A program made the translations under genes and the position numbers. Below, piece after piece: positions 7,685 to 43,694 of a DNA stretch of 64,000 bases. Each line of letters opens with the position of its first letter. The stretch's first letter is position 1. This stretch comes from Orbicella franksi (lineage: Eukaryota), in NCBI GenBank assembly GCA_964199315.1, contig OZ116711.1, positions 23,002,001-23,066,000 of the forward strand. The letters run 5' to 3'. The notes under the pieces were generated by a model. That model worked only from the letters and a program-made list of their open reading frames with translations. It did not search any database and was not told where the DNA came from.

Positions 7685-9271
7685 TTAAACGTACGTCACA
7701 CTATGGTAATTTTCTTCTTCAGCCGTAATATCTTTTCCATTACAGTTTTTAACTCGATAAGAATCGTCCTTAAAACATGAACAGCATTTTCTCCGAAGCC
7801 GTTTAGCTGTTGATCTTTTCTCCATGAACTCGGCCAGAGCATTAAGCGCACTAGAAACCACACACAAACCAAGCGTGGTCCAAGTCAGGTGAAATGCTAT
7901 ATTGGCTGTTTTCCGAGCTGCATTTTTTGAATGCTCACCATTTTGGGAAGAGGCTGTGGTTCTAGAGAAGCCTGGTACGTAATCGCCATACCCGATCGTT
8001 GAGAAACTGATAAACCAAAAATAAAACCCTTCAAGGAATGTCATATCATTAGCGTCATCGGTATACATTTGCAGTGTTGCTCCCAGTACTAACATTATTA
8101 ACATAAGCACGCAAGTCACTGCAGTACTCTTGGCCGCCACGTTAGCCGGTTCTCGTTTGAAGTATTTTCTTTCAATCTTTGTGATGAAGGAGCTGATTCC
8201 ACGGCTGATTAACTCACCAACTGACTTAAATGCCAGGATGGTTACAGGAATGCCCAGTACGGCAAATACGACACACAGAGCTTGACCAAGACTTGTGGAC
8301 GGAGCTAGCCTGCCGTATCCTAAAAAGTATAAATGAAATCATAGTAGATATTTTTTTTTTTTTTATCGAGTAAAGATATTGTTTCCCGACTCTGTAGTAG
8401 ACATAATAAAAACAGAGATGCCGAGTTAAGCAGAGTGAATGTTTTAGCGATCACGAGCTTTCGACGCTGTCACAGCGTCTTTCTCAAGTGAATATAGCGA
8501 GAATCTACTTGTCACGTGAACTTGGGGGGACCAAGTCACCTTCCAAAACATTCTCATATAGGGCCGGAAGTTCAAGTCCACGGTCTCGACTGCATTTTTT
8601 TATTTGTTTGTTTGATGGACCAGTTTAAATTGACCGGGTTTGGGACAGGGAATCGGATACCTGGAGTTAAGTGGGAACGCTCTTCCCTTTCCACCCCCAG
8701 ACAATAGGGATTTTATTCATTCAAACGATATTCCAACAATTGTTTGCGGGTAAGAGGCAAGAAGGTTCTGGAGCAACCTCCTTTCCCGGGATCTCTCATC
8801 TTTCCGCCCTCCCGGAGCGAGAGAGGAGAAAAGATGAGATACCCTGGGAACGAAGCTGAGGCAAGCACTCGGAAAATTGAATCATGGCCTGCCATGATCA
8901 CCGAGAGCATTAAATAACATTTTTTTTTTGGTAAAACATTCTAGGTTCGGCTTACCAATAGTCGTCAATGTTTCGAATGCAAACCGCACGCTTTGGAAAT
9001 AACTCCATGAGGGCCCAGCCATATTAAATGCATCGTCAGTGATCTCAATGAAATTATCAAAGTCGTCTTGGGACATGTTGTATTTCTTTGCCATGTCTTC
9101 TCTCAGGCTGACCAGAAGTTCTTCCTTTCTCTTTAAATTATTTACGGCATTGGGATGTTCCACTGCGGCGAAAATTAACCCTCCAGATGCTGCGAGCACG
9201 GAGAACGCGATCACGCGAAACAGGGTCTTCCACAACAACGGGCGGGCACTTTGTGAACAACAGCCACTCAT
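7685..9271 (-). CDS. Two-pore-domain (K2P/KCNK) potassium channel, 2 coding exons, 316 aa
   Basis: Exons 8956-9271 and 7685-8319 join in frame (phase 1 GT-AG) to give P1 FAFETLTTIG|YGRLAP, TM2 LCVVFAVLGIPVTILAFKSVGE, TM3, P2 FYFWFISFSTIGYGDYVP and TM4. An acceptor at 9284-9285 implies an upstream non-coding exon. KCNK subfamily cannot be assigned by eye. Confidence 0.95.
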
Positions 9272-13830: not shown

Positions 13831-15291
13831 GTTGTACGGAGGAAGGGGGCGCGGGGGGGGGGGGTGAGGAGGGGATGTAGAGAGTTTCAGTAGACATATC
13901 GTTAGTTGTGGTTAACTTGTATTACCAGTGGAATCCTATTCTTTCGAACACTCCATTTTTCGAATCTCCAGATTATTGCAAGCAATTCTTTGCTCCCCTG
14001 TCAAAAACGTGAGCAGATTACATTTACCTCGATTTTCAAACCAGCTGATTTTCGGAACCAATTTCCGTTTCCGTTTTAAAGTGGTTCGGAAAATCTGAAG
14101 TTTCCAAAAGTCGAGGACAAATTTCTTCTATCCAGCATTTCAGGAGAAAAGAACTTCTTAATGAGCTTGGCTCTACGTTCCAATTTAAAGTGAACTTTGT
14201 GTTGTTAATTTCTATCGGGAAATTGGTTCGGGGATTTATGTTTCACTGTACTCTAAATGTTAATTCAAATTAAACACGCGTTTATATAGATGAAATCACA
14301 ATTGCTTTGCAAAATTAAATCACTGTTAAATAGAGTTTGTCAAATTTAAAAAAAACGTAATACAAATCTTAATTACTAGATTCCCAAAGAACTAGTGTCG
14401 CCAGACATCTCTTAAACCATTTTCATTTTTTAAAGGTTGAAATTATTTCTTTAGTTGAAAATAATTAGTAAGAGACATTTTATCGTATTTTCTATGTAAT
14501 GAATGAAGGGAAGATGTATTTTGTATAACTGATGTAAGAGTTCTCATTTCACTCTCATTTCACTTGCCGTAACCAAAATGGCGGAGTCCAGGATAGACTG
14601 GTATTTCAGATCACTTGTAGCTGCGCTCACTCCTGACAGATGCCATCAGCGCGCACTCGAAGAGAAAATTCGTACCCCGCACGGTTACATAGCGGCTTCG
14701 GCGCTGAGATTTTTTTCCCAAGTATCTGAAGTTGTCAATTTCCGTTTTATTGAAAAAAAACAAAGACAAAAATATATGCCGAGTGAAAAACAAACAAACA
14801 AACAAACAATCAGACAAGAGGCTGGGAACAAATAATCACAGTTGGCCGAAAACTCGATATTTACTTGTCCTCAACCATCTTAAAATAATAGTGATCGCGT
14901 CTGAAGATCAGTAAAACACAAAGTACTCGGAAATAAACTGCGAAATTATGTTTCTCGGCAGGTTTGAATATGGTTCAAAATTTCAACCGTCAGCGGAGAA
15001 ATGAAGCGTTTTTTAACTTGTAGCTGAGATCTGGAATCTGCAAAGCTTACTGATACCTGAGAGAAATCGATACCTGATGGCTGATGAGAAATCGCCAGAA
15101 ATCGAGCAAAGATTTCAGCACCCTTATCCAGACCTCTCTCATTATAATCGGTTAAAATGGAACTCACTTCGTTAGATTTGAGAAAGTCACACGAATAGAC
15201 GATGACGTAAGTTCATTCGGGGGAATATCTCCGTTTCTGTTTATTACCTTATCACCAAAAACGAAGCGTAACTTGCTCATTTAATTTGTAC

Positions 15292-15303
15292 GGGGAATTC
15301 CCC
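15292..15303. promoter_or_regulatory. Perfect NF-kB (kB) palindrome GGGGAATTCCCC
   Basis: Exact 12-bp match to the canonical p50-type site. A CRE-like TGACGTAA lies at about 15203-15210. Target gene unknown. Confidence 0.4.
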
Positions 15304-18300
15304 TCTGCAGATGGTCTTTAGAAACCTATATTACGTGGTCACAGGATTAATTCAAGTTGCTACCAGTGCTCACGGAAAAAAAAGAAAACTATGAAACCGT
15401 ACCGCTCATTCCAAATAATAAGAAAAGATAAATGCCAGACCAGCTCTTGTATCTGAGTTAACTTTACGTACGAACCTCACTGCATTCGGTCTTTAGTCAC
15501 GACCTCGATTAAGATTCTCCCATACAGACCTCCTGCTCAGTTAATAAGAACTAAGTAAAATTTAAACCAAATTCAGGGTGCTTTGTAGCTTGAAAGTGAA
15601 CCACGGGGGCTAATTTTTTTCTGTTTCTATTTGTAGTTGAACGCTTTCTTTGCATATTCAGCTGGAGCTTAAACCCATAGACGCACTGAAGATCAGAGAT
15701 CTCGCTAATTGCGAGATTCTTAGCAGTCAAGTAAAAAGTAAATTCATTTTTTTCTGACTAGGCGCTGTTCTTGTTGTCATCGTCCTCGTTGCTCTGTATT
15801 ACGTTGTACGTCCCGCCTTATACGTGTGCGTTTTCTTTTTTCTTTCTCCCGTGGGTATCCGAGATGAAAAATATGTTCTCTGATGATTAACACGCACCTT
15901 AATCTACACCCAATACTTGGGCGGCTGGGTGTGGTCACAGAGGTAACTCACGTTTGGGAGTGCCATGTGTGTGTGTAGGGAGGGGGCGGTGGGGAGTGGT
16001 GGGAGAAGGCGAAGCATGGGGGGTGGAAACCTGATTCACAGAGCTGATTACCTGTCACGAGCTCAGGAAAAAAAATCAAATTCAGCTGGCAATTAATCCC
16101 TCTAGAAAACCCATTTATAGGGTTAAGGCTAGGTCACCCGGTCAGTGGAACTTCTTCTGAGGAACAGACTTTTAACGGAATAGGTTTATCTTAACGAAAG
16201 ACTTCGTTAATGCTGATAATGAGCGCAATTCCCTTGTCGTTTTACTCGGTTACTCACCGCACATTTCTTTAGCCGTCGACAACACAGACGAAAGGAAGTG
16301 GTTAAAATTTTACACACTGAGTCATGCTTGTGTGTTCAGAAAACAAACATGTACCTAAACTGGATGTGTAATTGTGACTTAAATTGCGAATGAAAACTGA
16401 AACACTAGGGGAAAATGAAACGTGTCAAAAGTGTAGCAATGACAGATGCTATAATACGGCAAAATAAGACTGTGTTAAATGCCACAAAATAAGCGATAGG
16501 GCTGGATATGCTAAATATGGAATTACAAATTTCACTATAGCTGCTGCGGGCTGCAAATATTAGATAGCTACTCGCCCTGTTTCTTTAATTTGATACATGT
16601 TCTATACATCTATATATCCGTGGCCAGTCGAAACCGAAAGCGTATCCCACGGTTCGAAAGTCTGCTAACTCTCGCGTCATTGTTATTTTGAAGAAGACCC
16701 TGTTTAGCTGCTAGAGGCTAGAAATTTGAATTTCATTCTGATTTAAATTTCTCATCGAGCGGTAAGTAGTGTACAGTAAGATTGCCTTCAATTTTGAACT
16801 AAAGAACTAACAACTAACTGTTTTATTTGTAAGATAAACTATAATATTAGATAAACACAGAAATAAATGACAAATTGAGAAATTACATTGGCCACTGAGA
16901 AATATAAACTTGTGAAGTTTACTGGCTAATAGATATTGAGGCGTTAAGCGTGTTAAACCTTGCCATCAGATGACATAAAGCTGAAGCAAAACATATGTAC
17001 TGGAAGAGAAAAGTAAAAACCTCAGTAAAATAATGGTCATAAGATGGGTGGCCGCTGAACGAAAAACGTATCTTTGAGTCTCTGAAGTTACCAATAAAAA
17101 ATGAGGGATTTGGACTTAAATAATTTCTTAGTTTAAAACGCGAATTACGTTTTAACGAATAGCTACTTTTCTACTATGATGAAGGTGGACAGATGCCACC
17201 GAAAATTCAGTGAACAAAAACCTACAGATCAAATATATTTAATTAAAATGATCAGTCTACCGATCGCAACAATCAAAGTGATTTGAACTTCGTTCTCAGA
17301 AAGCTATTCATTTTATAGTTCAGTATCTTGGTGTCAGTTAAAGCATGGAATAGAATATACGAACAAGGCTGTAATGATTCTTCTGTTATCTTGCAGACGA
17401 ATTCCCTTTTGTCTTCTGACAAGCTTATACACGGTTCTTGCTGTTAATTTTTTTCCTTCACACTGCGAAAGGGAAATAGTGGTGATTCAGGTTGCCTGTA
17501 ACAATATTCTAGCAGACCTCGTTTTTGGTAAGTATCCTCATCGCCGAATCTACCTTTATTTTTACATACCTACTGAACGTTTTAATGAACCTCCCGAGTG
17601 CGACTTTTGATGTGAACAATAAGCTTTAAAAGGAGGAGAAAACTTTTACAATTAAGATTACAACGTTAAACGTTCAGTAAAAAGGAATAGTTAAGATTTC
17701 AATACCTTTTGAAACCCTTTTATTTCAAGATTTTCTTAAAAATTGTCACAAGTTTTTAAGTCGTTTGTTAAGAGTTCCAGACCATAACAGTTCATTTAAA
17801 GTTCTCTGGCCCTAGTAGCAATTTTAAATTAAGGCTGTAAAGAATAGAAGGTAGTATTTGTTGACGAAACGCTATATACTAGAAAAGGTTCTACCAAAAC
17901 AATATAATAAAAAAAGGTTGTGATGAAATTGCCGGCAAAAGTAGTATAAAGTAAAGAATTCAGAGTGCCTTCGTATAACTAACCCCAACCAGTTATTCTT
18001 TGTTTTTAATGTTGTTATTTTTCATTGAGAAGCTTTGAACGCCCCAGTAATTCATTGTTCTATCATAGGAAATCCTTTTGCTGATCCAGACTGAATTGGA
18101 TTTCATTCTGATTTTGACTCCCCAAGTAACGGTAAGAACAGTAAACTTAAGGCTAGTCATAAGATATCGTCTATTTGATGCCCTCGTTTGGCATGTTTAC
18201 TGTACATTAAAAATATTTTTACAGTCATTAAAATCAAGGACTAATGTATCATTGTCCTTCTCAGGGAAAGAGCCTTGTTGATGACGTAGTAGAAGTTGGA

Positions 18301-18492: not shown

Positions 18493-18865
18493 ACTTTCAG
18501 TTTCATGGACGCTGATCTTCGTCCTTGGTTTTCTTGGCTTGTGTTCATTTTGTTGGTGACTGTCAGTTTTGCACGTCTGTCAGCCTCTGACTGGCAGCTA
18601 CATGTGTTTGTCTTCGTATGAGGCCTACAGTTTTGTGCGTTTAGTCTGTAACTTTCAGATTTCCGTGTTATTTTTGTCTGTGAATAGTAAGCTGTGCGTC
18701 TATCTATGTCTGTGATCAAGACTTTCAGTTTAGCGTGTTCCTTTAGATCTGGGGCTTTCAGTTTTCTTAAGCTTATCTTGGTGAGTAAATTGCAGTTTTG
18801 TTTGTTTATGTTTCTTTGTAAAATTTAAGGCATGTTTCTCTATCTTGGTCTGAAACTTTCATTTC
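18493..18865. promoter_or_regulatory. Cluster of IRF-E/ISRE-like motifs upstream of the TPR-CHAT gene
   Basis: Read on the - strand: GAAACTGAAAGT (18493-18504), GGAAATCTGAAAGT (18651-18664), AAACTGAAAGT (18721-18731), GAAAACTGAAAGC (18754-18766), GAAATGAAAGT (18855-18865). One more, GGAAACTGAAAT, at 19508-19519. Motif match only. Confidence 0.45.
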
Positions 18866-20048
18866 TTAAGGGGTCGTCAGTACATCTCAATTTTGTACCT
18901 ATTAAGTCCCCCACTAAACTACGAAATTGTTCTTCTATATCAACAGGGTTTAATTTCAAGGTAAAACAGGGACCTATAGTAGAAACACGCGTCTTGAATA
19001 AACTTGTGATAGTTTTTTTATGTTAACCTGTAGACAAACAAAGCCATCCTCTCGTAAAAGAGACTGTAGTCGCTTTTGTATTCTTTCCCCTGAGCGAAAG
19101 GGAACTGGTAAGTTTAGTATGTTATTTATAGTTAAATATGTTATTGGTGGTTTGTCAATCAAAACGACCTTAACAGTAGCAAAAGATTTGTTCAGGTCGC
19201 TGATTATGTTTTCCTGCAAACAACATCTGAAGACAAAAATATGACAGTCCTGTTTCACCTTACGCTAACAATTCTTCCTTTTCAAGGCAGTGGGAGTTCG
19301 ATAACAGATTGTTGACCGTTTAATTATGCGCATGTCAGAGTAGACATAGTCAGTGTTGGAAACGTCTTCATCAATTTTTGGTCTTTTTCCACGTACAGTA
19401 TTAAATTTATAGTGTTATTGTGTACTAAGAAGACTCCAGTCAAAATAACAAACCCGTGTTTTTATCGGAGCAATGTGGAACGTAGAATAATTTCGATTTT
19501 AGGATGAATTTCAGTTTCCAGAACTTAACATTTAAGATATCATCACGCTTTTAAACCAAAACGTAATGTAGAATATGTCGTAAAAATTCCTGCGACGAAT
19601 TAACTCGAGCTCAAGACTTCCTTTCTAACTTACAAAGAGGAAAATATTTCTTAAGTTTATGAGAGCTTTTTTTTCAGAGCAGATTTTGAAAAGCGAAGGG
19701 CTGAATAATAATTTTTTTATGAAAACTATTGCGTCTTCAAAAATGTCCACTTCTAACTCAGCAGATGCATTAAGCCACGACTGCAAACGCTGAGATAGTC
19801 TCGGCATGTAAATAAATCAATTACGCCCCTCGTTACATTCTTTGAGTAGCGCTATACTTTCCCAGGAGGCCATAGTATGGTGGAATCTTTGTTTACAATC
19901 AATTTGCTTCATTAGCAACAGGGATTCAGTTTCTGATCGTGATCAAGCTACAAAAATATCAATCCCGCCAATAACAAAAGGGCAAACAAAATTGGGTCCA
20001 AATTTGTTTCCACTTTTATTCTGTTATATCCTCACAGAAGTGTTTGAC

Positions 20049-23000
20049 ATGAACAACGTAGACGACGTTATACAAGTCATCTCAATCGGCCTCATGGTCG
20101 CCGTCTTCCTTCTCAACACTAGTCGATTTCTAAAAGCCATCGAGTTATGCAAGGAATGTTTGTTCATTCTGAAAGACAGAGCAGGCATAAAAGACGAGAA
20201 ATTAAGCAAGTCATTCTACAAGAGGATATACTTACTAATGTGGAAGGCTTGTAATCGCATATGCGATAATACAAGGGCCATAAAATATGCAGAGAAACTT
20301 CTCCTAATTTACCGTGAAAGTGATGAAAGACTTAAGGAAATGAACCTAAGCACAACAGTTGGGTGGATGTATCTCTGTCAAAGTAACTACAAAAAGGCAA
20401 AACAACTCAATAAAAAAGCGCTCCTAGTCAGTAAAGAAATTGGAAACAGAGAAAGAGAAGCTGTCTGTTACACAAACCTTGGAGTCGTGTATCAATCAGT
20501 TGGAGAATATGAGAAGGCTAGAGAACATCTCGAGAAGTCACTTGCGATCCGGAAAGAAATTGGAGACAGAAATGGAGAAGCTGCCTGTTACACAGACCTT
20601 GGAGTCGTGTATCAATCAGTTGGAGAATATGAGAAGGCTAGAGAACATCACGAGAAATCACTTGCGACCCTTCAGCAAATTGGAGACAGAAATGGAGAAG
20701 CTGCCTGTTACACAAACCTTGGAGTCGTGTATAAATCAGTTGGAGAATATGAGAAGGCTAGAGAACATCTCGAGAAGTCACTTGCGATCTGGAAAGAAAT
20801 TGGAGACAGAAATGGAGAGGCTACCTGTTACACAAACCTTGGAGTCGTGTATCAATCAGTTGGAGAATACGAGAAGGCTAGAGAACATCACGAGAAATCA
20901 CTTGCGATCCGGAAAGAAATTGGAGACAGAAATGGAGAGGCTACCTGTTACACAGACCTTGGAGTCATGTATCAATCAGTTGGAGAATATGAGAAGGGTA
21001 GAGAACATCACGAGAAATCACTTGCGACCCTTCAGCAAATTGGAGACAGAAATGGAGAAGCTGCCTGTTACACAAACCTTGGAGTCGTGTATGAATCAGT
21101 TGGAGAATACGAGAAGGCTAGAGAACATCTCGAGAAATCACTTGCCACCCTTCAGCAAATTGGAGACAGAAATGGAGAAGCTGTCTGTTACACAAACCTT
21201 GGAGTCGTGTATAAATCAGTTGGAGAATACGAGAAGGCTAGAGAACATCTCGAGAGGTCACTTGCGATCCGGAAAGAAATTGGAGACAGAAATGGAGAAG
21301 CTGTCTGTTACACAAACCTTGGAGTCGTGTATCAATCAGTTGGAGAATATGAGAAGGCTAGAGAACATCTCGAGAAATCACTTGCAATCCAGAAAGAAAT
21401 TGGAGACAGAAATGGAGAAGCTACCTGTTACTCAAACCTTGGACTCGTGTATCAATCAGTTGGAGAATATGAGAAGGCTAGAGAACATCACGAGAAATCA
21501 CTTGCGACCCTTCAGCAAACTGGATGCAGAAATGGAGAAGCTGCCTGTTACACAAACCTTGGAGTCGTGTATCAATCAGTTGGAGAATATGAGAAGGCTA
21601 GAGAACATCTCGAGAAATCACTTGGGATCCAGAAAGAAATTGGAGACAGAAATGGAGAAGCTACCTGTTACACAAACCTTGGAGTCGTGTATCAATCAGT
21701 TGGAGAATACGAGAAGGCTAGAGAACATCACGAGAAATCACTTGCGATCGGGAAAGAAATTGGAGACAGAAATGGAGAAGCTACCTGTTACGAAAACCTT
21801 GGAACCGTGTATCAATCAGTTGGAGAATATGAGAAGGCTAGAGAACATCTCGAGAAATCACTTGCGATCAAGAAAGAAATTGGAGACAGAAATGGAGAAG
21901 CGACCTGTTACGTAAACCTTGGAACTGTGTATCAATCAGTTGGAGAATACGAGAAGGCCAGAGAACATCTCGAGAAATCACTTGCGATCCTTAAACAAAT
22001 TGGAGGCAGAAATGGAGAAGCGACCTGTTACGGAAACCTTGGAACCGTGTATCTAGCAGTTGGAGAATACGAGAAGGCTAGAGAACATCTCGAGAAATCA
22101 CTTGCTATGAGGAAAGAAATTGGAGACAGAAATGGAGAAGCTACCTGTTACAAAAACCTTGGAACCGTGTATCTAGTAGTTGGAGAATACGAGAAGGCTA
22201 GAGAACATCTCGAGAAATCACTTGCGATCAGGAAAGAAATTGGAGACAGAAATGGAGAAGCTGCCTGTTACACAAACCTTGGAGCCGTGTATCAATCAGT
22301 TGGAGAATACGAGAAGGTTAGAGAACATATCGAGAAATCACTTGCAAACCTTAAACAAATTGGAGACAGAAATGGAGAAGCGACCTGTTACGGAAGCCTT
22401 GGAACCTTGTATCAATCAGTTGGAGAATATGAGAAGGCTAGAGAACATCTCGAGAAGTCCCTTTTGATCAGTAAAGAAATTGGAGACAGAAGTGGAGAAG
22501 CTAACTCATACGCATGCCTTGGAACTCTGTATGAGAAAGTTGGCGAATATGAGACGGGCTCACACTACAATGAAAAATCCTTGTCCATCAGCAGAGAAAT
22601 TGGAGACAGATATAAAGAAGCTTTGTCTTACCTAAATGCAGGTGTTCAACTTTACTCTCTTGGAAAGTTTAGCAAGGCTAATGAATATAATAAGAAAAGT
22701 CTGGTCATCTTCACAGACATTGGGCTGAAAGAAGGGGTGGCCAGCTTTTACCTGAGCCAAGGAAATGTAGAGCTAGCTGTGGGTAACTCTATCAAGGCAA
22801 AAGAATATTATGAACAAGGTCTTGCAATAAGCAAAGAAATTGGAGACAGGAAAAAAGAAGCAACTGGATACTTGTCGCTTGGACGTTTCTTTTATAAGCA
22901 GTCTGAATATGATAGAGGGGAAGAATATATCAAGGAGGCGCTTGCATTAAGTGAGAAGATTGGACATATCGATTTGCAGTTCCAATCGCTCGAAATGATG

Positions 23001-24500
23001 GCACACATTAGAATGAAAGAAGGAAAGATTGAGGAAGCTATCTCGTATTTCCTTTCTGGTATTGAAAAATGCGAGGAAATGCGCGGCTCTCTCCAAGACA
23101 ACGATAAATTAAAGATTTCTTTCTCTGACCGCAATATTCATTCCTACAGAGATCTCACTATGCTGCTTTGTGCAACCGGGAATCATATTAAATCTCTGTA
23201 CGTTTCAGAGCTTTCAAGGGCCAGGGCTTTGGTAGATTTAATGTCAGCTCAGTACTCGCAGCACTCTTTGAAGAATCAAATCTCGACTGATCCTCGCACA
23301 TGGGCTGGTCTCGAAAGCATCGTGGCCAAAGAATGTAACCGCAGCTGTCTCTACCTCTCGTATCATTCTGAAAGTATATATTTGTGGATTCTTAAAGCAG
23401 GTGGAGCTACACATTTTCAGGAGATAAAAGGAAATGATCTAATTGCTAGCGAAGGATTAAGTCAACGAGTGGAAGAGTTTTTTGATTTCAGAAGTTTTGG
23501 CGTTTTACCAGACGAGATTTGTGAAGACGGATCTTTACACGTTTTTCAACCAGAATCCAAATCAAGCGAGGGAGATAGCCGTGAAGTTTGGCGAATTGGA
23601 GTGGAAACTAAAGCTAACCAAGGACCCAAAATGAACCTTCCTATCTGTTACAAACTTATCATCGCTCCAGTGGTGGACTTTCTTGAGGGTCCCGAAATCA
23701 TTATTGTTCCTGACCGTGCTTTATACCGAATTCCATTTGCTGCCTTAACTGAAAGAGGAAAGTACTTATCCGAGACTTTCAGGATCCGTATTGTTCCTTC
23801 TTTAACAACTCTCAAGCTCATTACTGAAAGTCCAGCAGACTATCACTATCAGACCGGTGCGTTGATAGTGGGAAATCCTGATGTTGGTGAAGTGCATTTC
23901 AAAGGAAAACTCACGAAAATTTCGCGACTGCCATATGCAGAAACCGAAACTAGGATGATAGCAAAAAAGCTGGGTGTCGAGCCTCTGTTAGGACAGCAAG
24001 CGACTAAAGAGGCAGTACTTCAAGCGATGAGTTCAGTGGCTCTGATTCATATCGCCGCACACGGTGATGCAGAAAGAGGAGAAATTGCCCTTGCGCCATC
24101 TTTTCGTATTCCTAACGGGATACCTCAAGAGGAACTGTACTTATTGACAATGACGGACATTTCAAACGTTCAACTGCGGGCTAAACTGGTAGTCCTTAGC
24201 TGTTGCCACAGTGCTCGAGGACAGACAAAAGCCGAGGGAGCAGTCGGAATTTCCCGAGCATTATTAGGATCTGGCGCACGTTCAGTGTTGGTGGCACTGT
24301 GGGCCCTGGATGACAAAGCAACAGAGCAGTTAATGACCCATTTCTACGATCACCTTGTTGCTGGGGAAAGTGCTGGTGAATCTCTACACGAGGCCATGAA
24401 GTGGATGAGAAGTAATGGCTATGACGTGAACCAGTGGTCACCTTTTATACTGATTGGAGATGACGTGACATTTGATTTTGGAACGAATGGTAAGATTTAA
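20049..24500 (+). CDS. TPR-repeat + CHAT (caspase-HetF-associated with TPR) domain protein, TTC28-like architecture, single coding exon, 1483 aa
   Basis: The ORF 19842-24500 is open, but an acceptor (tatcctcacag, 20027-20037) precedes ATG 20049 (MNNVDDVIQVISIG), the likely start. About 23 TPR-like 40-aa units are followed by LSELSRARALVDLM and a CHAT domain: IIIVPDRALYRIPFAAL, LIHIAAHG (His codon 24060-24062), LVVLSCC (Cys codons 24201-24206), GLSRAL-like GISRALLGSGARSVLVALW, WSPFILIG. Confidence 0.95.
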   Translation: MNNVDDVIQVISIGLMVAVFLLNTSRFLKAIELCKECLFILKDRAGIKDEKLSKSFYKRIYLLMWKACNRICDNTRAIKYAEKLLLIYRESDERLKEMNLSTTVGWMYLCQSNYKKAKQLNKKALLVSKEIGNREREAVCYTNLGVVYQSVGEYEKAREHLEKSLAIRKEIGDRNGEAACYTDLGVVYQSVGEYEKAREHHEKSLATLQQIGDRNGEAACYTNLGVVYKSVGEYEKAREHLEKSLAIWKEIGDRNGEATCYTNLGVVYQSVGEYEKAREHHEKSLAIRKEIGDRNGEATCYTDLGVMYQSVGEYEKGREHHEKSLATLQQIGDRNGEAACYTNLGVVYESVGEYEKAREHLEKSLATLQQIGDRNGEAVCYTNLGVVYKSVGEYEKAREHLERSLAIRKEIGDRNGEAVCYTNLGVVYQSVGEYEKAREHLEKSLAIQKEIGDRNGEATCYSNLGLVYQSVGEYEKAREHHEKSLATLQQTGCRNGEAACYTNLGVVYQSVGEYEKAREHLEKSLGIQKEIGDRNGEATCYTNLGVVYQSVGEYEKAREHHEKSLAIGKEIGDRNGEATCYENLGTVYQSVGEYEKAREHLEKSLAIKKEIGDRNGEATCYVNLGTVYQSVGEYEKAREHLEKSLAILKQIGGRNGEATCYGNLGTVYLAVGEYEKAREHLEKSLAMRKEIGDRNGEATCYKNLGTVYLVVGEYEKAREHLEKSLAIRKEIGDRNGEAACYTNLGAVYQSVGEYEKVREHIEKSLANLKQIGDRNGEATCYGSLGTLYQSVGEYEKAREHLEKSLLISKEIGDRSGEANSYACLGTLYEKVGEYETGSHYNEKSLSISREIGDRYKEALSYLNAGVQLYSLGKFSKANEYNKKSLVIFTDIGLKEGVASFYLSQGNVELAVGNSIKAKEYYEQGLAISKEIGDRKKEATGYLSLGRFFYKQSEYDRGEEYIKEALALSEKIGHIDLQFQSLEMMAHIRMKEGKIEEAISYFLSGIEKCEEMRGSLQDNDKLKISFSDRNIHSYRDLTMLLCATGNHIKSLYVSELSRARALVDLMSAQYSQHSLKNQISTDPRTWAGLESIVAKECNRSCLYLSYHSESIYLWILKAGGATHFQEIKGNDLIASEGLSQRVEEFFDFRSFGVLPDEICEDGSLHVFQPESKSSEGDSREVWRIGVETKANQGPKMNLPICYKLIIAPVVDFLEGPEIIIVPDRALYRIPFAALTERGKYLSETFRIRIVPSLTTLKLITESPADYHYQTGALIVGNPDVGEVHFKGKLTKISRLPYAETETRMIAKKLGVEPLLGQQATKEAVLQAMSSVALIHIAAHGDAERGEIALAPSFRIPNGIPQEELYLLTMTDISNVQLRAKLVVLSCCHSARGQTKAEGAVGISRALLGSGARSVLVALWALDDKATEQLMTHFYDHLVAGESAGESLHEAMKWMRSNGYDVNQWSPFILIGDDVTFDFGTNGKI
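20452..22491 (+). repeat. Coding tandem array of 17 near-identical 120-bp (40-aa TPR) units
   Basis: Units recur exactly every 120 nt (ctNcctgtta/ctgtctgtta at 20461, 20581 ... 22381). Consensus NGEA(T/A/V)CYTNLGVVYQSVGEYEKAREH(L/H)EKSLA(IxKE/TLQQ)IGDR. Confidence 0.98.
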
Positions 24501-26918
24501 TGAAAACACGCGCTTCCATATCTTTTCAAAGGGCTCCTGGTATTTACTCACAGTTTCCTTAGATGTCATCGATCAAACGTTTTGTAATATCAAAAGAGGG
24601 TTAGGTTTTTGTATATCTGACTATTTCTTTATCGTTCAGTTGTCATTTGATCTTGTGCCTCTAATATATTTTACAACTGATAACGTACTCTGTCGATCAT
24701 GAGGGTGACGAAACTTTAACGTAGTTTTTGAACGAATTAAAAAACGCGCTCGTATTTCGAGGGTCAGTGACCACATGAAAACTGCGGAGATCTGAAAAAT
24801 TGCGAATTTTTGGCATCTTGACTTTCTCGCATTTTGACATCTCACTTTTTCTGCGCTGGATTTGGTGATGAAATTATGTTCTGTATATTCTCCAATGAAT
24901 TTTCAATGTTGTTGTGAAAGACAAATGGATCACGTTGGCTGTTTTGCATGGTCCACCTTCCTTCCAACGCGTCCAAAACTCTATTCTGAAACTGTGCACG
25001 GTTCCAGCAGAAGTTTACCTTTTAACAAGCCACAGCCATGAATCCGACTTATTTGTTAAAATGAATCTATAGTTTGTAATAAGGCAACTGCTTTTTAAGA
25101 AAATGTATTTAGATGGTTACTATATTTTTTTGGTTTGTCTGTCAGGTGTTGGAAAGAATGATCAGGACGGCAGCGAGTGATTGTGTGAGAGGTAAAATAT
25201 GCCATGACCTCAATTGACAGTTTTAGTGGTAGTGCTATAAATTAAATGGACGTTTAACTTTTGGTCCTTTTCTGTCTAAAAGATTCCTCATTTCTCTTGA
25301 GGTTACTAGGTATTCTAGCAAAAACATTTTTGAAACTTAATCGGAGTCTGCAGTGCCAGCTGAGCGTTGAGCTGTAATAACTGCTTGAACCAGTAAAACC
25401 TTAGAAAAACTTCGGTTCATAAAGTAACTTTTGGTATCGGTCTTTAGACTATGACAGAAATTGCTCTGGTCTTTGCTCCGAGGAGAAATAAGGAGTAGGC
25501 TTCACTTATTAACCTAATGTTTTGTTAGCAAGACTTATTAAAGTTTTTAAAATTATTGTACTTGGAAAGTTTTTACACTTAGCAGCAATTGTAAAACTAA
25601 CTTAATTGAAGAAGTAGGATTTTAAAACAATGTGAGTAACAACATGCAATTGGTACATTTCTGAACAAGTTTCATGCATACAATCTAGGTATTGTTAGTA
25701 TTTGCATATACCAGACCTTCTTTTTACAAAGTTAAAGAGCTCTGTTATTTGAGATTTTATCAAGCATTAAGGGAACTCCTATATAAAAAGGACCGGTGTG
25801 CTCTTCTACCTTGTAGCGGTTATATAAACGAGCGGTTTCGGGCCTCTTAGGGTGTTCAGCTACCCACATGAGTTCCGCAGCTGGAGTTTCTGCAGTAGCT
25901 TTTACGGTACGTATTTGATAATCAACTTTACGAGTAGAAAGTACTTGAAGCAATCGTCTTTAACCCCATTAAAAATTACGAAAGTGTCAGTTAATATGTT
26001 GTTTTTGGAATTGGTTCCTCTTCAGGGTAAAAAAAATTTTACGGCACACCCACAAAATAGGATCTTGGTACCATTTAGTGGTTCTTCTTTAAGAGCATAA
26101 ACAGCATATTTGAATTTTTCTTGAACGCTGTGCATGTTTACAGTTAGCTTTGTATATAGTGCGACTGAAAACGCTGACTTGTTGGTTAAATTTACATAAA
26201 GTAATAAGAGTTATAAGTAGAGTTACATAAGAAATTGTTCGCATAACATTTATCACATTTATCTTGAACATTTTGTCAAATAACAAGAACTTTAATTTCC
26301 TATAAGTATTCACTGCCTAGGAAAAGTTGACAGGCCTATTATTTCATTTGTTATATTTTAAAGTCTAGAAGAATCAATTAAACTGTAAGCAGTGTAAATC
26401 TCAGCTCGAGTCCATTTCTGTAGACTGCTTCTCAACTATATTGGACTCTAAAAAACTGTGGAATCGTCGGTACGTGATTGACAAGGAGTGGACTAGGAGG
26501 GGTAGGGTGAAGAGAATAAAAGCTGCATATTCCTTTGTTCTCTACCTGCATACGGTGAAGAAACACTACGCTTTAATTTCCCCGCTTTCGTTGAATGGCG
26601 GAAACGGCGAGAAAAATGCATTAAATTGTCCCTACTATAGCGACACAGTAAAGACAAAAAAAGAAGAAACATGCCAGCTTTATATAACGACAACGTCAAA
26701 GTACCAACTTCAGCGCATTATGTAGAAAGTGAATGATGTCCTTTCTCCAAGATAAAATGAAAATGTTACATGACCAAAAATCTTGCTTTTCCCATGTAAT
26801 TTGTCCGGAAAATGAAAGATTTATGGAACATTACGGCGTGACAACATATCGAGCCTTTCATGTCGTCATGGGTGAATTTTCACAGGGTACGATAATTGTC
26901 TTTGTTGGCTTGCCTGTC

Positions 26919-39982: not shown

Positions 39983-41882
39983 ATGACTTCTCTGAGCTGC
40001 TTCGCCGTACTTTTATGCGTGGCAATAAGCCATTTATCCACTCCTGTGTCATCCCAAGATCATTATCCGCCGGGTTGGTGGGACGCTCCGAGCTCCTTAG
40101 ATGACTTCCCTGTGGAACAGATAGATAACAAAACCATGATAATCGTCAATCCCTGGGATTATCTACAGAGAATGGGAATTTTCAAGTTAATGGTGCAGAC
40201 TACCCAGGGGTATTTCAAATCCTGGGGATATAATAACACTGGGAACCTCCTCTGGGGGCTGCCGCTCCAGTTCGGATGGCAAATGACTTCTGGTCGACTC
40301 CGCGATATGGCTGAAACCCAGGGATGCAACGCCAAGAGCCACTGTGTGTCGCCAAACAGTTGGTGGGCTGATATGAATTACTACCTCTCTGTCCTACCGT
40401 TCCTCGGGGCTTTAAATGCTGGTATATTCTCTCCTCTGGAGTATCCTATGTACATTACCCCACCGGTTAATGTGAGCGACAAAGTCAAACAGAAGTTCTG
40501 TACCAGTATTCCAGAATGTTCGATGAATCACCCCGAGGTTATTCGCGACTGGACCGAGTTCTTCGAGCGAGTTGATTCTTTTCAGCATTCGTCCTCGCGC
40601 TTTGATCCTGATAAAGATGTTATAGTAGCATTGCTGTGGAAAGCACACACAACATCAATACTAAGAGGTGAGTAAAGTTCACAAAGCGTTGAGGGCGCGG
40701 TGGCCTCATGGTTAGTGGTCTCGTCTCCGGATCGCCTGACCGGAAACTTTGTGCTGTGTTCTTGGGCGAGGCACTTTACTCTCACAGTGCCTCTCTCTGC
40801 CCAGGTGTATAAATGGGTACTCGCGAATTTAATGCTGGGGGTAAACCTGCGATGGACTAGCATCCCGTCCACGGGGGAGTAGAAATATTGACTTAGTCAC
40901 TTCATGCTACAGAAACTGAGGATAAGCTCTGTCCTGATGGGCCACTTGGCTCGTATGCAGACTTTAATGCTCACAAAGCGACGCTGAAACAAATTTAACT
41001 AACTGCAATCGCCTGCAGTAGCGGGTTCATCTGTAAATGTCAAGATTACAATAAAACATCCCTTTATTTTGTTATTTTAAGGCGGAAGTATAGCGAAATA
41101 GCGGCCTACTCTGAGTCCTAACGTCGCCATTGGAGTTAATTTCAGGTGTTAAAATGGGCGATTTTTCCATCGGACATTTAGCGTTTTAAGAACCCAGAAC
41201 AAGCCTACTGAATTCGTACGCTTTTTCTGGGGAGAAACATAAGACATTTTCAGTTGTTTGTTTGTTTGTTTGTTTGTTTGTTGCGCAAGGCGTCTAATTC
41301 AGTCGCAGAATGACATGGATGTGATCGGGTCGACAAGATATAGAGAACAGGTTGAAATCTCTTTGTATGAAGCCTAAGCATTACTACAAAAAACTACCAA
41401 GTAAACGCTGGTAAAATTTCACTTTCTTAGTTGATGTAATCTTTTCGTTCTTTCTTTTTTTTTCAGCACAACCTCTTTTCACCCAGGAGGTCAACCTATT
41501 ATCATTGCCTGAAAGGAAGTTCGGGGTGGGCTGGGCCCTACTTGTAGAATTTATCGCAGCTACACACTTTCAAACAAATCTCAATAACACCGCTGAACAG
41601 CAGATAGCGTTACCGCCCAGAATCTTGAAAAGCGATGACAGAGTTCCTTTTATCCCAGATTTCACTCAAGCACAAAATCGTGCTCTATTGGCGATCAATT
41701 TTTTTCACAGTACAGATTTCGACACAGAGGGGCTGTTGCTGAAGTTCTGGCGTAGAGCTATGTGCTCTCCAAAGGGGCGCGCTATTGGCAGGGACCTCCT
41801 GGAGAACCTCATAGACAATCCTTGGATCATTCCCAAAAAGCTCTTTAAACTCCTTTGGGGCTTGCTGATATACCCCTGCTAA
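39983..41882 (+). CDS. LEG1: LEG1 (liver-enriched gene 1 / C6orf58) homolog, secreted, 2 coding exons, 366 aa
   Basis: Exons 39983-40667 and 41467-41882 join in frame. Signal peptide MTSLSCFAVLLCVAISHLSTPVSS. LEG1 motifs IVNPWDYLQRMGIFK, NLLWGLPLQFGWQMTSGRL, SWWADMNYYLSVLPFL, LWKAHT, PPRILKSDDRVPFIPDFT. Confidence 0.93.
40690..40947 (+). mobile_element. SINE family B, copy 3 (in LEG1 intron)
   Basis: tRNA-like 5' end gggcgcggtggcctcatggttag, central gcactttactctcacagtgcctctctctgcccaggtgtataaatgggtac, 3' tail gctcgtatgcagacttta. Confidence 0.8.
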
Positions 41883-42620: not shown

Positions 42621-43694
42621 TTATCTGATTAGAGAAACTTTTTTCCGATTCATAGCTCCTAGACGAGAATTTCTAGTCTCTCTTTGCAAAAGTCTGCTGG
42701 GGAACTCTGAATACTTGCGAGACGATGTGGCGAGCTGAGGTCTGCGATCAGCTACAGTAACCGCCGGTCTGTTGTCAAACAGAACGTACTGACTAAAGAT
42801 GGCGTGTAGGTCTGGTGTGAGCGTTCGAGCCACTGCAGGAATACTACTCTGTCTGCTGCTATAGGCAGAGGAAGCGCTAGTGACGCGTGTGTTTTCCAGC
42901 TGGTTATCAGCGTCAAGCTCGGGGTGAGAAGGAGTCCACATCTTCGCCAGTCCGATCTTTCGAGTCACCGCGGGTTCACTGCGAGTTGTCAGTCGCGAAA
43001 TGGCTCGCGCATCCACGCGCGGAGAAGTAGACACCTTACTGGCGTGACCCAGTTCTAGCGAGGTCTTTGGACGAATTCGATCCTCCATCTTCTGAGCGTT
43101 CTTTTCGATTTTCTCTTTGTCCAAGTTTCTTTTCGTTTTCTTCGCCCATTCTTTGTCGCTTAAGAAAAACTCCGTGTCTCGAACACAGTCTGAAGCGTTG
43201 GCCTCTGTTTTAAGAATTGTAGCGCATTCGCCATTAGCCATTTTGGCAGCTAATAAATAAGCCGAGAAGCCTTTCTTGTTTCTCAGGTCCACACTGAGCC
43301 TGTATTTAAGCAACACATGCAATATTTCACGCAGAGTAGGTACATTGCCTGACATGGCGGCATACATAAGTGGAGTATTGCCTTCTTTATCAGCCTTGTT
43401 GACGTCACAGTCATCATCTATTAGTAGTTTAACAAGCTTACAATGGCCATGCTGGCAAGCATAAGACAAGGCTGTCCTTCCCTGGTGATCCACACACCCC
43501 ACGCCGGCGCCGCGGCTTAACAAGAGTCGAGCAATCCGCGTAGCTAAGGTGTCTTTGGATGCGCAAGCAGCCATCATAAGCGGAGTACGACCTTGGTCAT
43601 CGACTATTTTTGGATTAACACCAATATCCAACAACAGACGAATCTGGTGAAGCCTTCCTGAGCACACGGCTTGGTGAAGACAAGACAAAGACAT
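42621..43694 (-). CDS. Ankyrin-repeat protein, ANKRD63/ANKRD34-like, intronless, 357 aa
   Basis: Single ORF with about 5 N-terminal ankyrin repeats (QGRTPLMMAA, QGRTALSYACQHGH, EGNTPLMYAAMSGN, KGFSAYLLAA) and a Ser/Arg-rich disordered C-terminus. Confidence 0.88.
   Translation of the reverse strand: MSLSCLHQAVCSGRLHQIRLLLDIGVNPKIVDDQGRTPLMMAACASKDTLATRIARLLLSRGAGVGCVDHQGRTALSYACQHGHCKLVKLLIDDDCDVNKADKEGNTPLMYAAMSGNVPTLREILHVLLKYRLSVDLRNKKGFSAYLLAAKMANGECATILKTEANASDCVRDTEFFLSDKEWAKKTKRNLDKEKIEKNAQKMEDRIRPKTSLELGHASKVSTSPRVDARAISRLTTRSEPAVTRKIGLAKMWTPSHPELDADNQLENTRVTSASSAYSSRQSSIPAVARTLTPDLHAIFSQYVLFDNRPAVTVADRRPQLATSSRKYSEFPSRLLQRETRNSRLGAMNRKKVSLIR

What the first reader, a model, noticed from the sequence alone, without database searches (positions are those of the whole stretch)
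20452..22491. 17 x 120-bp TPR units form a recombining mosaic with variation focused on a few helix-A positions
Seen in sequence: units are near-identical at DNA level, but substitutions recur at set positions. These are A-(V/A/T)-CY-(T/S/E/V/G/K)-(N/D/S)-LG-(V/L/T/A)-x-Y-(Q/K/E/L), H-(L/H/I), and two alternative tails AIxKE vs ATLQQ, where x is R/W/Q/G/K. Heads and tails are combined in patchwork: units 2 and 5 share D/HH/TLQQ, and units 12-15 share LGTVY with different residues after CY. Established knowledge: helix A lines the TPR ligand groove. Concerted evolution plus hypervariable repeat positions is how fungal NLR WD40/TPR arrays (for example HET-E) diversify specificity. Inference: unequal crossover or gene conversion generates allelic binding diversity here.
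Basis: partly seen in the sequence, partly recalled or inferred. Interest (0 to 1): 0.75.

Follow-up and report, generated by a model that had tools for sequence, protein, structure and literature searches.

The report
Hypervariable TPR array of a coral protease
A coral gene joins 17 almost identical 40-residue TPR repeats to a caspase-like CHAT protease. The repeats are reshuffled as whole units and change fastest at the residues predicted to line the binding groove, as in fungal immune receptors.

Summary
Window 20433-22472 holds 17 in-frame 120-bp units, 83-98% identical, with no indels. They lie in a gene of 1491 codons: degenerate TPR cap, 17 homogenised units, 4 diverged units, linker, then a CHAT protease with invariant His and Cys.

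The genome is a stony coral. NCBI names the Orbicella faveolata counterpart 'TTC28-like'. At least 85 paralogs exist in this genome, and this TPR-CHAT expansion is already published.

- **Mosaic and concerted evolution:** the units form a recombinant mosaic. Each unit's closest relative lies in its own array.
- **Selection:** across 22 paralogous arrays, replacement changes exceed the synonymous rate 2- to 5-fold at unit positions 11, 14, 18, 21 (helix A) and 33, 40 (helix B). Other sites are at or below about 1.8, and most are below 1.
- **Groove mapping:** positions 11, 14 and 21 match peptide-contact residues of LGN/GPSM2, the closest solved structure.

Still unproven are copy-number polymorphism (17, 10, 5 and 3 units in four assemblies, the shorter three from or probably from short reads), ligand binding, and expression.

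This is not an NLR, because it has no NOD domain. It is a new variant of a known diversification regime, found in a known gene family.

The parts
20049..24489 (+). Main coding exon of the TPR-CHAT (TTC28-like) gene, starting at ATG 20049. A splice-acceptor-like cacag lies 11 nt upstream, suggesting a 5'UTR exon.
   Evidence: ORF. The start and the C-terminal splice are projected from the Orbicella faveolata RefSeq protein XP_020607438.1, P0121. Sequence read.
24490..25145 (+). Intron (GTAAGA ... tgtcag).
   Evidence: Donor seen. The acceptor and exon 2 were found by matching the C-terminus of P0121.
25146..25180 (+). Short last coding exon (…G-VGKNDQDGSE-stop). The spliced CDS is 1491 codons.
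20049..20432 (+). N-terminal cap of 128 aa: a hydrophobic first helix, then degenerate TPRs. No NOD domain.
   Evidence: Pfam TPR_12 at residues 70-125, E 1.2e-7, and nothing else above threshold.
20433..22472 (+). 17 homogenised 120-bp (40-aa) LGN-type TPR units. Unit u starts at 20433+120(u-1). Hot codons 11, 14, 18, 21, 33 and 40 start at +30, +39, +51, +60, +96 and +117 within each unit.
22473..22952 (+). Four diverged TPR units (18-21). They are conserved position by position in paralogs, so they act as a C-terminal cap that escapes homogenisation.
   Evidence: 50-72% identity to the array units. Gap-free positional comparison with paralog caps gives dN/dS 0.55-0.68 in 11 of 13 paralogs; two were out of register.
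22953..23648 (+). Last degenerate helical repeats plus a linker region (helices and a small beta sheet) with no Pfam family.
23649..24461 (+). CHAT caspase-like protease domain. Catalytic His codon at 24060-24062 (IAAHGD). Catalytic Cys codon at 24201-24203 (LSCCHS).
   Evidence: PF12770, E 4.7e-54, 184 bits against a cut-off of 24. His and Cys are invariant in 20 sequences of 54-88% identity. The fold matches DdvA, Csx29, separase and SAVED-CHAT. Coordinates.

Best explanation
This is one member of the expanded coral TPR-CHAT (TTC28-like) family. It is best read as a receptor arm fused to a caspase-like protease.

**Shown**
- The receptor arm is a superhelix of 40-residue LGN-type TPR hairpins.
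- Its interior units are kept near-identical by in-register duplication, deletion and exchange of whole or partial units (unequal crossing-over or gene conversion). The cap units at both ends escape this process.
- Replacement changes accumulate faster than synonymous ones at four residues on one face of helix A (unit positions 11, 14, 18, 21; canonical TPR positions 2, 5, 9, 12) and at two helix-B positions (33, 40).

**Inferred**
- The helix-A residues line the concave groove and contact an extended peptide or protein ligand.
- Point substitutions plus unit reshuffling therefore generate many groove specificities, both among the 85 or more paralogs and among alleles.
- Ligand engagement controls the C-terminal CHAT protease (invariant His/Cys). 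The protease then cleaves downstream substrates in an immune, cell-death or self/non-self pathway.

The evolutionary regime is the one described for highly conserved repeats of fungal NLRs. Here it serves a non-NLR architecture in an animal.
For: **Architecture**
- TPR_12 in 16 matched stretches plus CHAT. No NOD domain.
- His and Cys invariant.
- CHAT fold hits to DdvA, Csx29, separase and SAVED-CHAT, E 1e-10 to 1e-5.
- Linker plus CHAT evolves at dN/dS 0.30-0.45 against paralogs.

**Family**
- At least 85 paralog matches, 327 first-look candidates, clustered on four chromosome-scale contigs.
- The expansion and the variable TPR length are published (PMC12314368; PMC9145168; PMC6208414).

**Unit dynamics**
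- 0% indels.
- Mosaic tests.
- All 17 units have their nearest neighbour in their own array; identity is 90% within the array and 80-86% between arrays.
- Within-array pS is 0.116, against dS 0.21-0.36 to the paralogs tested.
- Block duplication and excess similarity at unit distances 3-4.
- A 360-bp higher-order repeat in paralog L011.

**Selection**
- Tree-based counts on 177 unique units give omega of 3.0, 4.2, 3.4, 4.1, 2.1 and 3.8 at positions 11, 14, 18, 21, 33 and 40. Poisson p ranges from 2e-5 to 1e-22.
- Pairwise hot-site omega is 3.45 in this array and above 1 in 21 of 22 arrays.
- Hot sites defined without this array give omega 4.8 here (p = 4e-9), against 0.74 elsewhere.
- Hot sites carry 9-14 different residues. 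Structural sites carry 2-5.

**Structure**
- AF2 model with pLDDT 88. Helix A spans unit positions 6-22.
- The best solved matches are LGN/Pins TPR-peptide complexes.
- Gpsm2 contact residues R136, Y139, N100, K106 and R236 fall on unit positions 11, 14, 15, 21 and 11.
- PMC9187228 states that the alpha-A helices face the inner, ligand-holding surface.
Against: - No ligand, substrate or phenotype is known.
- Two polyA RNA-seq runs gave 0 and 9 reads. Only partial word matches were found in RNA contigs. Expression is therefore unproven.
- Position 40 has many synonymous changes too (per-site binomial p = 0.57). In this array it sits on a CpG.
- Taken alone, this array reaches per-site significance only at positions 14 and 40.
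- The omega estimates come from home-made counting methods on recombining sequences, not from codeml or HyPhy.
- Copy-number polymorphism rests on assemblies that are, or probably are, from short reads.
Confidence: 0.6

Rival explanations
1. Neutral by-product. A young tandem amplification in which exposed, unconstrained surface residues drift freely while the helix-packing residues are conserved. No selection for diversity and no specific ligand repertoire.
For: Global omega of the units is about 1 pooled and 0.72-0.84 in this array. Position 40 shows high synonymous turnover and a CpG context. Alone, this array has limited per-site power.
Against: Omega is 2-5, significantly above 1, at the same six positions in independent arrays, and this was cross-validated. 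Other exposed positions, such as 7, 27, 30, 31 and 34, stay at 0.5-1.6. The four helix-A hot sites form one helical stripe (i, +3, +7, +10) that matches LGN contact positions.
Confidence: 0.12
2. The 17-unit length and order is partly an assembly artefact: a mis-expanded or mis-ordered repeat. The mosaic would then reflect assembler joins rather than biology.
For: Four assemblies of the same locus give 17, 10, 5 and 3 units. No read-level check of the array was possible.
Against: The frame stays open through 2040 bp with no indels. No word of 101 bases or longer is repeated inside the array, so accurate long reads can place every unit. Units 1, 12, 13, 16 and 17 recur unchanged in other assemblies: units 1 and 17 are 120/120 in DNA in L031, and all five are identical in protein in P0121. 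The order is collinear in all four versions. Two shorter versions are MEGAHIT short-read contigs; I believe the RefSeq assembly is also short-read (own knowledge, not checked). Collapse there is the likelier error. The selection signal comes from 22 arrays, not from this one alone.
Confidence: 0.08
3. A decaying or silent duplicate. The locus is a non-expressed member of a birth-and-death family, and the repeat variation has no current function.
For: Almost no RNA-seq reads in the two runs sampled. The closest paralog, L002, carries in-frame stops.
Against: 1491 codons are intact, with splice signals and the catalytic dyad conserved. Alleles or orthologs from three other assemblies are intact and 99% identical in the CHAT region. 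CHAT dN/dS is 0.30-0.45. RNA contigs of six runs hold 18-37% of the words of the unique 3' part.
Confidence: 0.12
4. A housekeeping TTC28-like scaffold. Like human TTC28/TPRBK, it would act in mitosis or cytokinesis, and the repeat variability would be irrelevant to partner choice.
For: NCBI names it TTC28-like. It has the same TPR-CHAT architecture as human TTC28 (PMC12314368).
Against: Most metazoans have 1-2 such genes while corals have up to 362. Acroporids keep a separate canonical TTC28 ortholog (PMC9145168). Lineage-specific tandem expansion, array turnover and omega above 1 at groove sites are not expected of a conserved cell-cycle scaffold.
Confidence: 0.08

Closest known systems
Coral TPR-CHAT domain-containing proteins / TTC28-like expansion (Acropora, Montipora, Pocillopora; PMC12314368, PMC9145168, PMC6208414)
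   Same: Same architecture: a long N-terminal TPR_12 run and a single C-terminal CHAT domain. Same tandem gene clusters, highly variable TPR length, and NCBI name 'TTC28-like' for the O. faveolata counterpart.
   Different: In the passages I read and the term searches I ran, these papers describe gene number, TPR length and tandem gene duplication. They do not mention homogenisation of units within a gene, unit mosaics, or site-specific diversifying selection.
Highly internally conserved TPR/ANK/WD repeats of fungal NLRs (HET-E/NWD family, Pa_2_10340; Dyrka et al. 2014, PMC4986451)
   Same: Near-identical repeats, concerted evolution, and positive selection at a few positions per repeat that map to the concave binding surface. 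Repeat-number variation is suspected here.
   Different: There is no NACHT or NB-ARC domain. The effector is a C-terminal protease rather than an N-terminal HET or lipase-type domain. The host is an animal, where such conserved repeats make up only about 0.8% of TPR/ANK/WD repeats. Repeat-number polymorphism is not yet proven here.
LGN/GPSM2/Pins TPR domain (PDB 3sf4, 6hc2, 5a7d, 7ep7)
   Same: A 40-residue TPR period with a gap-free alignment and about 30% identity. It is the best sequence and fold match. Ligand peptides lie in the groove lined by the alpha-A helices, with contacts at unit positions 11, 14, 15 and 21.
   Different: LGN has 8 diverged repeats and GoLoco motifs, and it binds conserved partners such as NuMA and Insc. 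Here there are 17 homogenised plus 4 diverged repeats, variable groove residues, and a protease in place of GoLoco motifs.
Prokaryotic TPR-CHAT proteases (Csx29 of type III-E Craspase; DdvA; SAVED-CHAT) and separase
   Same: A caspase-like CHAT fold preceded by a helical-repeat arm. These are the best fold matches of the C-terminal half. In all of them the protease is switched by a partner bound elsewhere.
   Different: Only 12-16% identity. There is no CRISPR, cyclic-nucleotide or anti-sigma context. Their TPR arms are short, diverged and not hypervariable. The regulatory logic is transferred here by analogy only.

Membership tests
Coral TPR-CHAT / TTC28-like family | Long N-terminal run of TPR_12-type repeats | tested here: met
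   PF13424, E 4.6e-220, 16 stretches. 21 units in register.
Coral TPR-CHAT / TTC28-like family | Single C-terminal CHAT domain (PF12770) above Pfam's cut-off | tested here: met
   184.2 bits against a cut-off of 24; residues 1270-1540 of the ORF.
Coral TPR-CHAT / TTC28-like family | Caspase-like catalytic His and Cys | tested here: met
   H370 (AAHGD) and C417 (LSCCHS) are invariant in 20 sequences of 54-88% identity. Codons at 24060 and 24201.
Coral TPR-CHAT / TTC28-like family | Member of a lineage-specific tandem expansion in scleractinians | tested here: met
   At least 85 matches in its own genome, in clusters. 3214 database relatives at E<=1e-20; all source-named ones among the 120 listed are corals (Orbicella, Oculina, Stylophora).
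NLR / STAND receptors (fungal HET-E type) | Central NOD (NACHT or NB-ARC) NTPase domain | tested here: not met
   No such Pfam hit in the whole ORF, the N-terminal 128 aa or the linker.
NLR / STAND receptors (fungal HET-E type) | [quoted passage not shown] | tested here: met
   Units are 83-98% identical in DNA. Nearest neighbours are all within the array.
NLR / STAND receptors (fungal HET-E type) | Positive diversifying selection at a few repeat positions on the binding surface | tested here: met
   mapping
NLR / STAND receptors (fungal HET-E type) | Repeat-number polymorphism among individuals | tested here: inconclusive
   17, 10, 5 and 3 units in four assemblies of the locus. The shorter three are, or probably are, short-read assemblies. 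Read laying could not span the array.
LGN/GPSM (Pins) family | 40-residue LGN-type TPR repeats | tested here: met
   Gap-free HMMER alignment over 192 residues, E 1e-42 to 1e-45. Foldseek top hits.
LGN/GPSM (Pins) family | C-terminal GoLoco motifs that bind G-alpha-i | tested here: not met
   The C-terminal half is a linker plus CHAT. No GoLoco family is among the Pfam hits.
Type III-E Craspase Csx29 | Encoded beside, and bound to, Cas7-11 in a CRISPR locus | tested here: not met
   This is a eukaryotic spliced gene. Its neighbours are Leg1, ankyrin, RRM and ion-channel genes. Only fold-level similarity at 12-14% identity.

The most novel reading that the evidence does not exclude
The coral TPR-CHAT arrays would be a germline-encoded, highly polymorphic recognition system. 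Repeat-unit shuffling plus groove-residue substitution would create individual-specific receptor-protease alleles. These would act in allorecognition (colony fusion or rejection) or in discriminating symbionts and pathogens. The CHAT protease would execute a death or inflammatory response directly, without a NOD switch. That would make it an animal counterpart of fungal het-type NLRs with a different signalling core.
Probability: 0.2. Interest if true: 0.85.

Novelty: new variant of a known kind. Interest (0 to 1): 0.55.

Why it matters
Corals have no adaptive immunity, and the genes behind their histocompatibility and microbe discrimination are largely unknown. The TPR-CHAT expansion was known only as a count of genes with variable lengths.

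This work shows that the repeats inside these genes are homogenised and reshuffled. It also shows selection for change at the residues that line the ligand groove in the nearest solved homolog. Together these turn the family into a concrete candidate recognition repertoire.

The result gives testable handles:
- four codons per unit to genotype;
- unique flanks for long-read amplicons;
- a catalytic Cys to mutate.

It also extends the regime of concerted evolution plus hypervariable sites from fungal NLRs to an animal protein that has no NOD domain.

Tried and rejected
- **Full paralog arrays:** Paralog analysis is therefore limited to the 8-9 units nearest each CHAT domain (loci L002-L030).
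- **Read laying:** RNA runs X21 and X23 gave 0 and 9 reads. DNA runs are fragmented short contigs. The one joint inside the gene skips 1851 nt, which is not a multiple of 120, at depth 3.6, so I dismissed it. This gave no test of array length or of somatic variation.
- **Shorter arrays in other assemblies:** P0121, P0002 and P0122 have 10, 5 and 3 units. I did not accept them as proof of copy-number polymorphism. Two are MEGAHIT contigs, and I believe the third (O. faveolata RefSeq) is also a short-read assembly (own knowledge, not checked). The 4/11 join in O. faveolata falls between the two most similar units (98%). Two different haplotypes share an identical unit-10/unit-16 chimera, which is suggestive only.
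- **Alternate haplotig:** none found in the window's own assembly.
- **ISRE cluster:** another note calls 18493-19519 a dense ISRE cluster. The strict core GAAANNGAAA occurs only twice there.
- **Literature:** a search for a paper listing canonical hypervariable TPR positions found nothing in the library. The statement that canonical positions 2, 5, 9 and 12 are the classic ligand-binding positions therefore rests on my own knowledge, plus the LGN mapping done here.
- **Structure:** model coordinates are not returned, so concave or convex placement could not be measured directly.
- **Alternate-frame ORF:** the ORF at 20440-21915 (491 aa) is a by-product of the repeat, not a gene.
Full report
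**1. What is there**

Tandem Repeats Finder reports one array at 20433-22554: period 120, 17.7 copies, 90% matches, no indels. It lies inside the only long ORF of the region, 19842-24500 on the + strand. Pfam finds TPR_12 (E 4.6e-220, 16 stretches) followed by one CHAT domain (PF12770, 184 bits against a cut-off of 24) at ORF residues 1270-1540.

Cut in register from 20433, the protein reads as 17 units of 40 residues that are 83-98% identical in DNA. Four further units are 50-72% identical. A linker and the CHAT domain follow.

**2. Gene model and organism**

Sequencing runs that hold the unique 3' part are labelled as corals. The closest named protein is Orbicella faveolata XP_020607438.1, 'tetratricopeptide repeat protein 28-like'. 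It sits in the same 90% cluster as a contig protein that is 99% identical in the CHAT region.

That RefSeq protein starts at the MNNVDD methionine, window 20049. It ends with residues encoded by a mini-exon at 25146-25180, reached from a GTAAGA donor at 24490. The spliced window CDS is 1491 codons with no internal stop. A polypyrimidine-cacag acceptor lies 11 nt before the ATG, which suggests a 5'UTR exon.

The N-terminal 128 residues are degenerate TPRs. Neither they nor the linker contain a NOD domain.

**3. Family context**

The linker-plus-CHAT part finds at least 85 places in the window's own 497-Mb genome (327 first-look candidates). They are clustered on four chromosome-scale contigs, with open frames of 560-2284 aa.

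This expansion is published. TPR-CHAT domain-containing proteins number 276 and 304 in two Acropora species and up to 362 in Pocillopora effusa. Their TPR lengths range from 31 to 3832 aa, and they sit in tandem clusters in non-syntenic regions (PMC12314368). The family is also reported as TTC28-like in Montipora (PMC9145168) and as 'coral-diversified' in Pocillopora (PMC6208414). In the passages I read and the term searches I ran, the Acropora paper does not mention hypervariable sites, gene conversion, or selection within repeats.

**4. Unit dynamics**

In the 17-unit alignment, 41 sites vary and 24 are informative. Of 276 site pairs, 103 are incompatible with one tree, so at least 7 exchanges are needed within 120 bp. 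Neighbouring sites are more compatible than shuffled ones (p = 0.001). This still holds when each codon is one character (p = 0.0016). That pattern indicates exchange between units rather than recurrent mutation alone.

All 17 units have their nearest neighbour inside the array. Mean identity is 90% within the array and 80-86% to the other arrays. Within-array synonymous difference is 0.116, while synonymous divergence of the CHAT part from the 13 paralogs tested is 0.21-0.36. The closest paralog, L002, was not included in that comparison.

Units 3 and 4 positions apart are more alike than chance (p = 0.003 and 0.005). Block 2-4 matches block 9-11 at 96% against a 90% mean. Paralog L011 has a 3-unit, 360-bp higher-order repeat at 98%.

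The edges therefore escape homogenisation. Together this is the signature of in-register unequal exchange.

**5. Selection**

I used 185 units from 22 arrays and applied three counting schemes:
- distinct variants against the array consensus;
- parsimony counts on a tree;
- pairwise Nei-Gojobori-type counts.

All three agree. Overall omega is about 1. Most sites are below 1, and none of the other sites exceeds about 1.8. Positions 11, 14, 18, 21, 33 and 40 have omega 2.1-4.6 (Poisson p from 2e-5 to 1e-22).

Per-site binomial tests use each site's own synonymous count. They remain significant for positions 14, 21, 11, 18 and 33, but not for 40 (p = 0.57).

When hot sites are defined without the window array, the same six positions emerge. 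In the window array they carry 22 of 44 distinct replacement variants on 12 of 93 non-synonymous sites. That gives omega 4.8 (p = 4e-9), against 0.74 elsewhere. Hot sites show 9-14 different residues, including charge reversals. Packing positions show 2-5.

Caveats:
- The methods are home-made.
- Recombination violates the tree assumption.
- Alone, this array is significant only at positions 14 and 40.
- Position 40 here is a CGG in a CpG context, which explains its R to W/Q changes.

**6. Where the hot sites sit**

An AlphaFold2 model of the cap plus 13 units has pLDDT 88. It shows helix A at unit positions 6-22 and helix B from position 26 through position 3 of the next unit. The hot positions 11, 14, 18 and 21 are spaced +3, +4, +3, so they form one stripe on helix A.

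The best sequence and fold matches are LGN/GPSM2/Pins TPR-peptide complexes. The alignment is gap-free with a 40-residue period. In Gpsm2 the alpha-A helices face the inner groove that holds the peptide (PMC9187228).

The published contact residues map as follows. The 3sf4 alignment was used, and the numbering offset of 8 was verified on eight residues.

| Gpsm2 residue | Unit position |
|---|---|
| A56 | 11 |
| R136 | 11 |
| R236 | 11 |
| Y139 | 14 |
| N100 | 15 |
| K106 | 21 |
| D81 | 36 |
| R221 | 36 |

Alignment to consensus CTPR places the hot sites at canonical TPR positions 2, 5, 9 and 12. From my own knowledge, these are the classic concave ligand-binding positions. Positions 33 and 40 lie on the same face of helix B as contact position 36, but their exposure is not verified.

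**7. Effector**

The catalytic His (24060) and Cys (24201) are invariant in 20 sequences of 54-88% identity. The linker plus CHAT evolves at dN/dS 0.30-0.45.

A moderate model (pLDDT 63, built from an alignment of 20 sequences) matches the CHAT proteases DdvA, Csx29 (Craspase), separase and SAVED-CHAT. All of these are partner-switched proteases. I therefore infer that ligand engagement by the TPR arm gates the protease. This step is not shown.

**8. Alleles**

Contig L031, from another sample, is collinear with the window for 5 kb upstream and 3 kb downstream at 97-98% identity. It carries 5 homogenised units: window unit 1, a variant of unit 8, unit 9, a chimera of unit-10 head and unit-16 tail, and unit 17.

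L032, from a different sample and 1.5% divergent downstream, has 3 units and the identical 10/16 chimera. The O. faveolata RefSeq protein has 10 units in the same order.

Replacement differences between matched non-chimeric units fall at hot positions 11, 14, 18, 21 and 33. They also fall at positions 6, 7, 15, 24 and 28.

L031 and L032 are MEGAHIT short-read contigs, and I believe the RefSeq assembly is also short-read. At word lengths of 81 or less the array has repeated words. The copy-number differences are therefore suggestive, not proof. Read laying could not span the array and showed almost no RNA.

**9. Verdict**

- dN/dS exceeds 1 at specific sites.
- The variable sites lie on the groove helix.
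- Unit sequences differ between individuals.

Array-length polymorphism, ligand binding and expression remain open.

The locus fails the defining NOD test for NLR membership. However, it works like the highly conserved repeat arrays of fungal NLRs (PMC4986451). It belongs to the already described coral TPR-CHAT family. What is new is the within-gene diversification regime and its mapping to the ligand groove.

Noticed in passing
window 14693-15930: A 1.24-kb stretch present in the window is absent from the allelic contig L031, which is otherwise collinear at 97%. This is an insertion/deletion polymorphism about 4.4 kb upstream of the gene.
   Followed up: no
L011:3433-4539 (own genome C15, about 17.41 Mb): This paralog's array has a 360-bp, 3-unit higher-order repeat at 98% match, against 92% at period 120. 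That indicates very recent block duplication.
   Followed up: partly
loci L018-L025 (own genome C14, 8.7-8.9 Mb cluster): Very young arrays: within-array synonymous difference is 0.016-0.042, with whole-unit pN/pS of 1.6-3.7. Units are often closest to units of neighbouring genes, so exchange or duplication between genes is ongoing there.
   Followed up: partly
window 20067-20123 (protein residues 7-25): A conserved hydrophobic first helix (VIQVISIGLMVAVFLLNTS) is also present in paralogs. The only hit is a sub-threshold match to a viral small membrane protein family. Whether it is a membrane anchor or a TPR cap helix is open.
   Followed up: no
window 18493-19519 and whole window: The ISRE-like core GAAANNGAAA occurs 29 times in the window against 7 expected. 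Only two copies (18495, 19509) lie in the stretch that another note calls a dense ISRE cluster.
   Followed up: partly
window 18800-20040: The 1.2 kb upstream of the coding exon is conserved at 66-85% beside many paralogs. The duplicated unit therefore includes the upstream, possibly promoter or 5'UTR, region.
   Followed up: no
L031 and L032 (ENA samples ERZ27245420 and ERZ27245412): Two contigs that differ by 1.5% downstream carry an identical chimeric unit: window unit-10 head plus unit-16 tail, with two private changes. This is either a real 6-unit deletion allele or a reproducible assembler collapse.
   Followed up: partly
window 20440-21915 (+, other frame): A 491-aa ORF in a second frame of the array. 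It arises because the repeat lacks stop codons in that frame, and it is not a gene.
   Followed up: yes
window 7685-8140(-), 39983-40675(+), 42621-43694(-), 59731-60396(-): Neighbouring exons encode an ion-channel fragment (Ion_trans_2), Leg1, an ankyrin-repeat protein and an RRM protein. The TPR-CHAT gene is a singleton here. Its nearest paralog lies about 690 kb away and carries stop codons.
   Followed up: no
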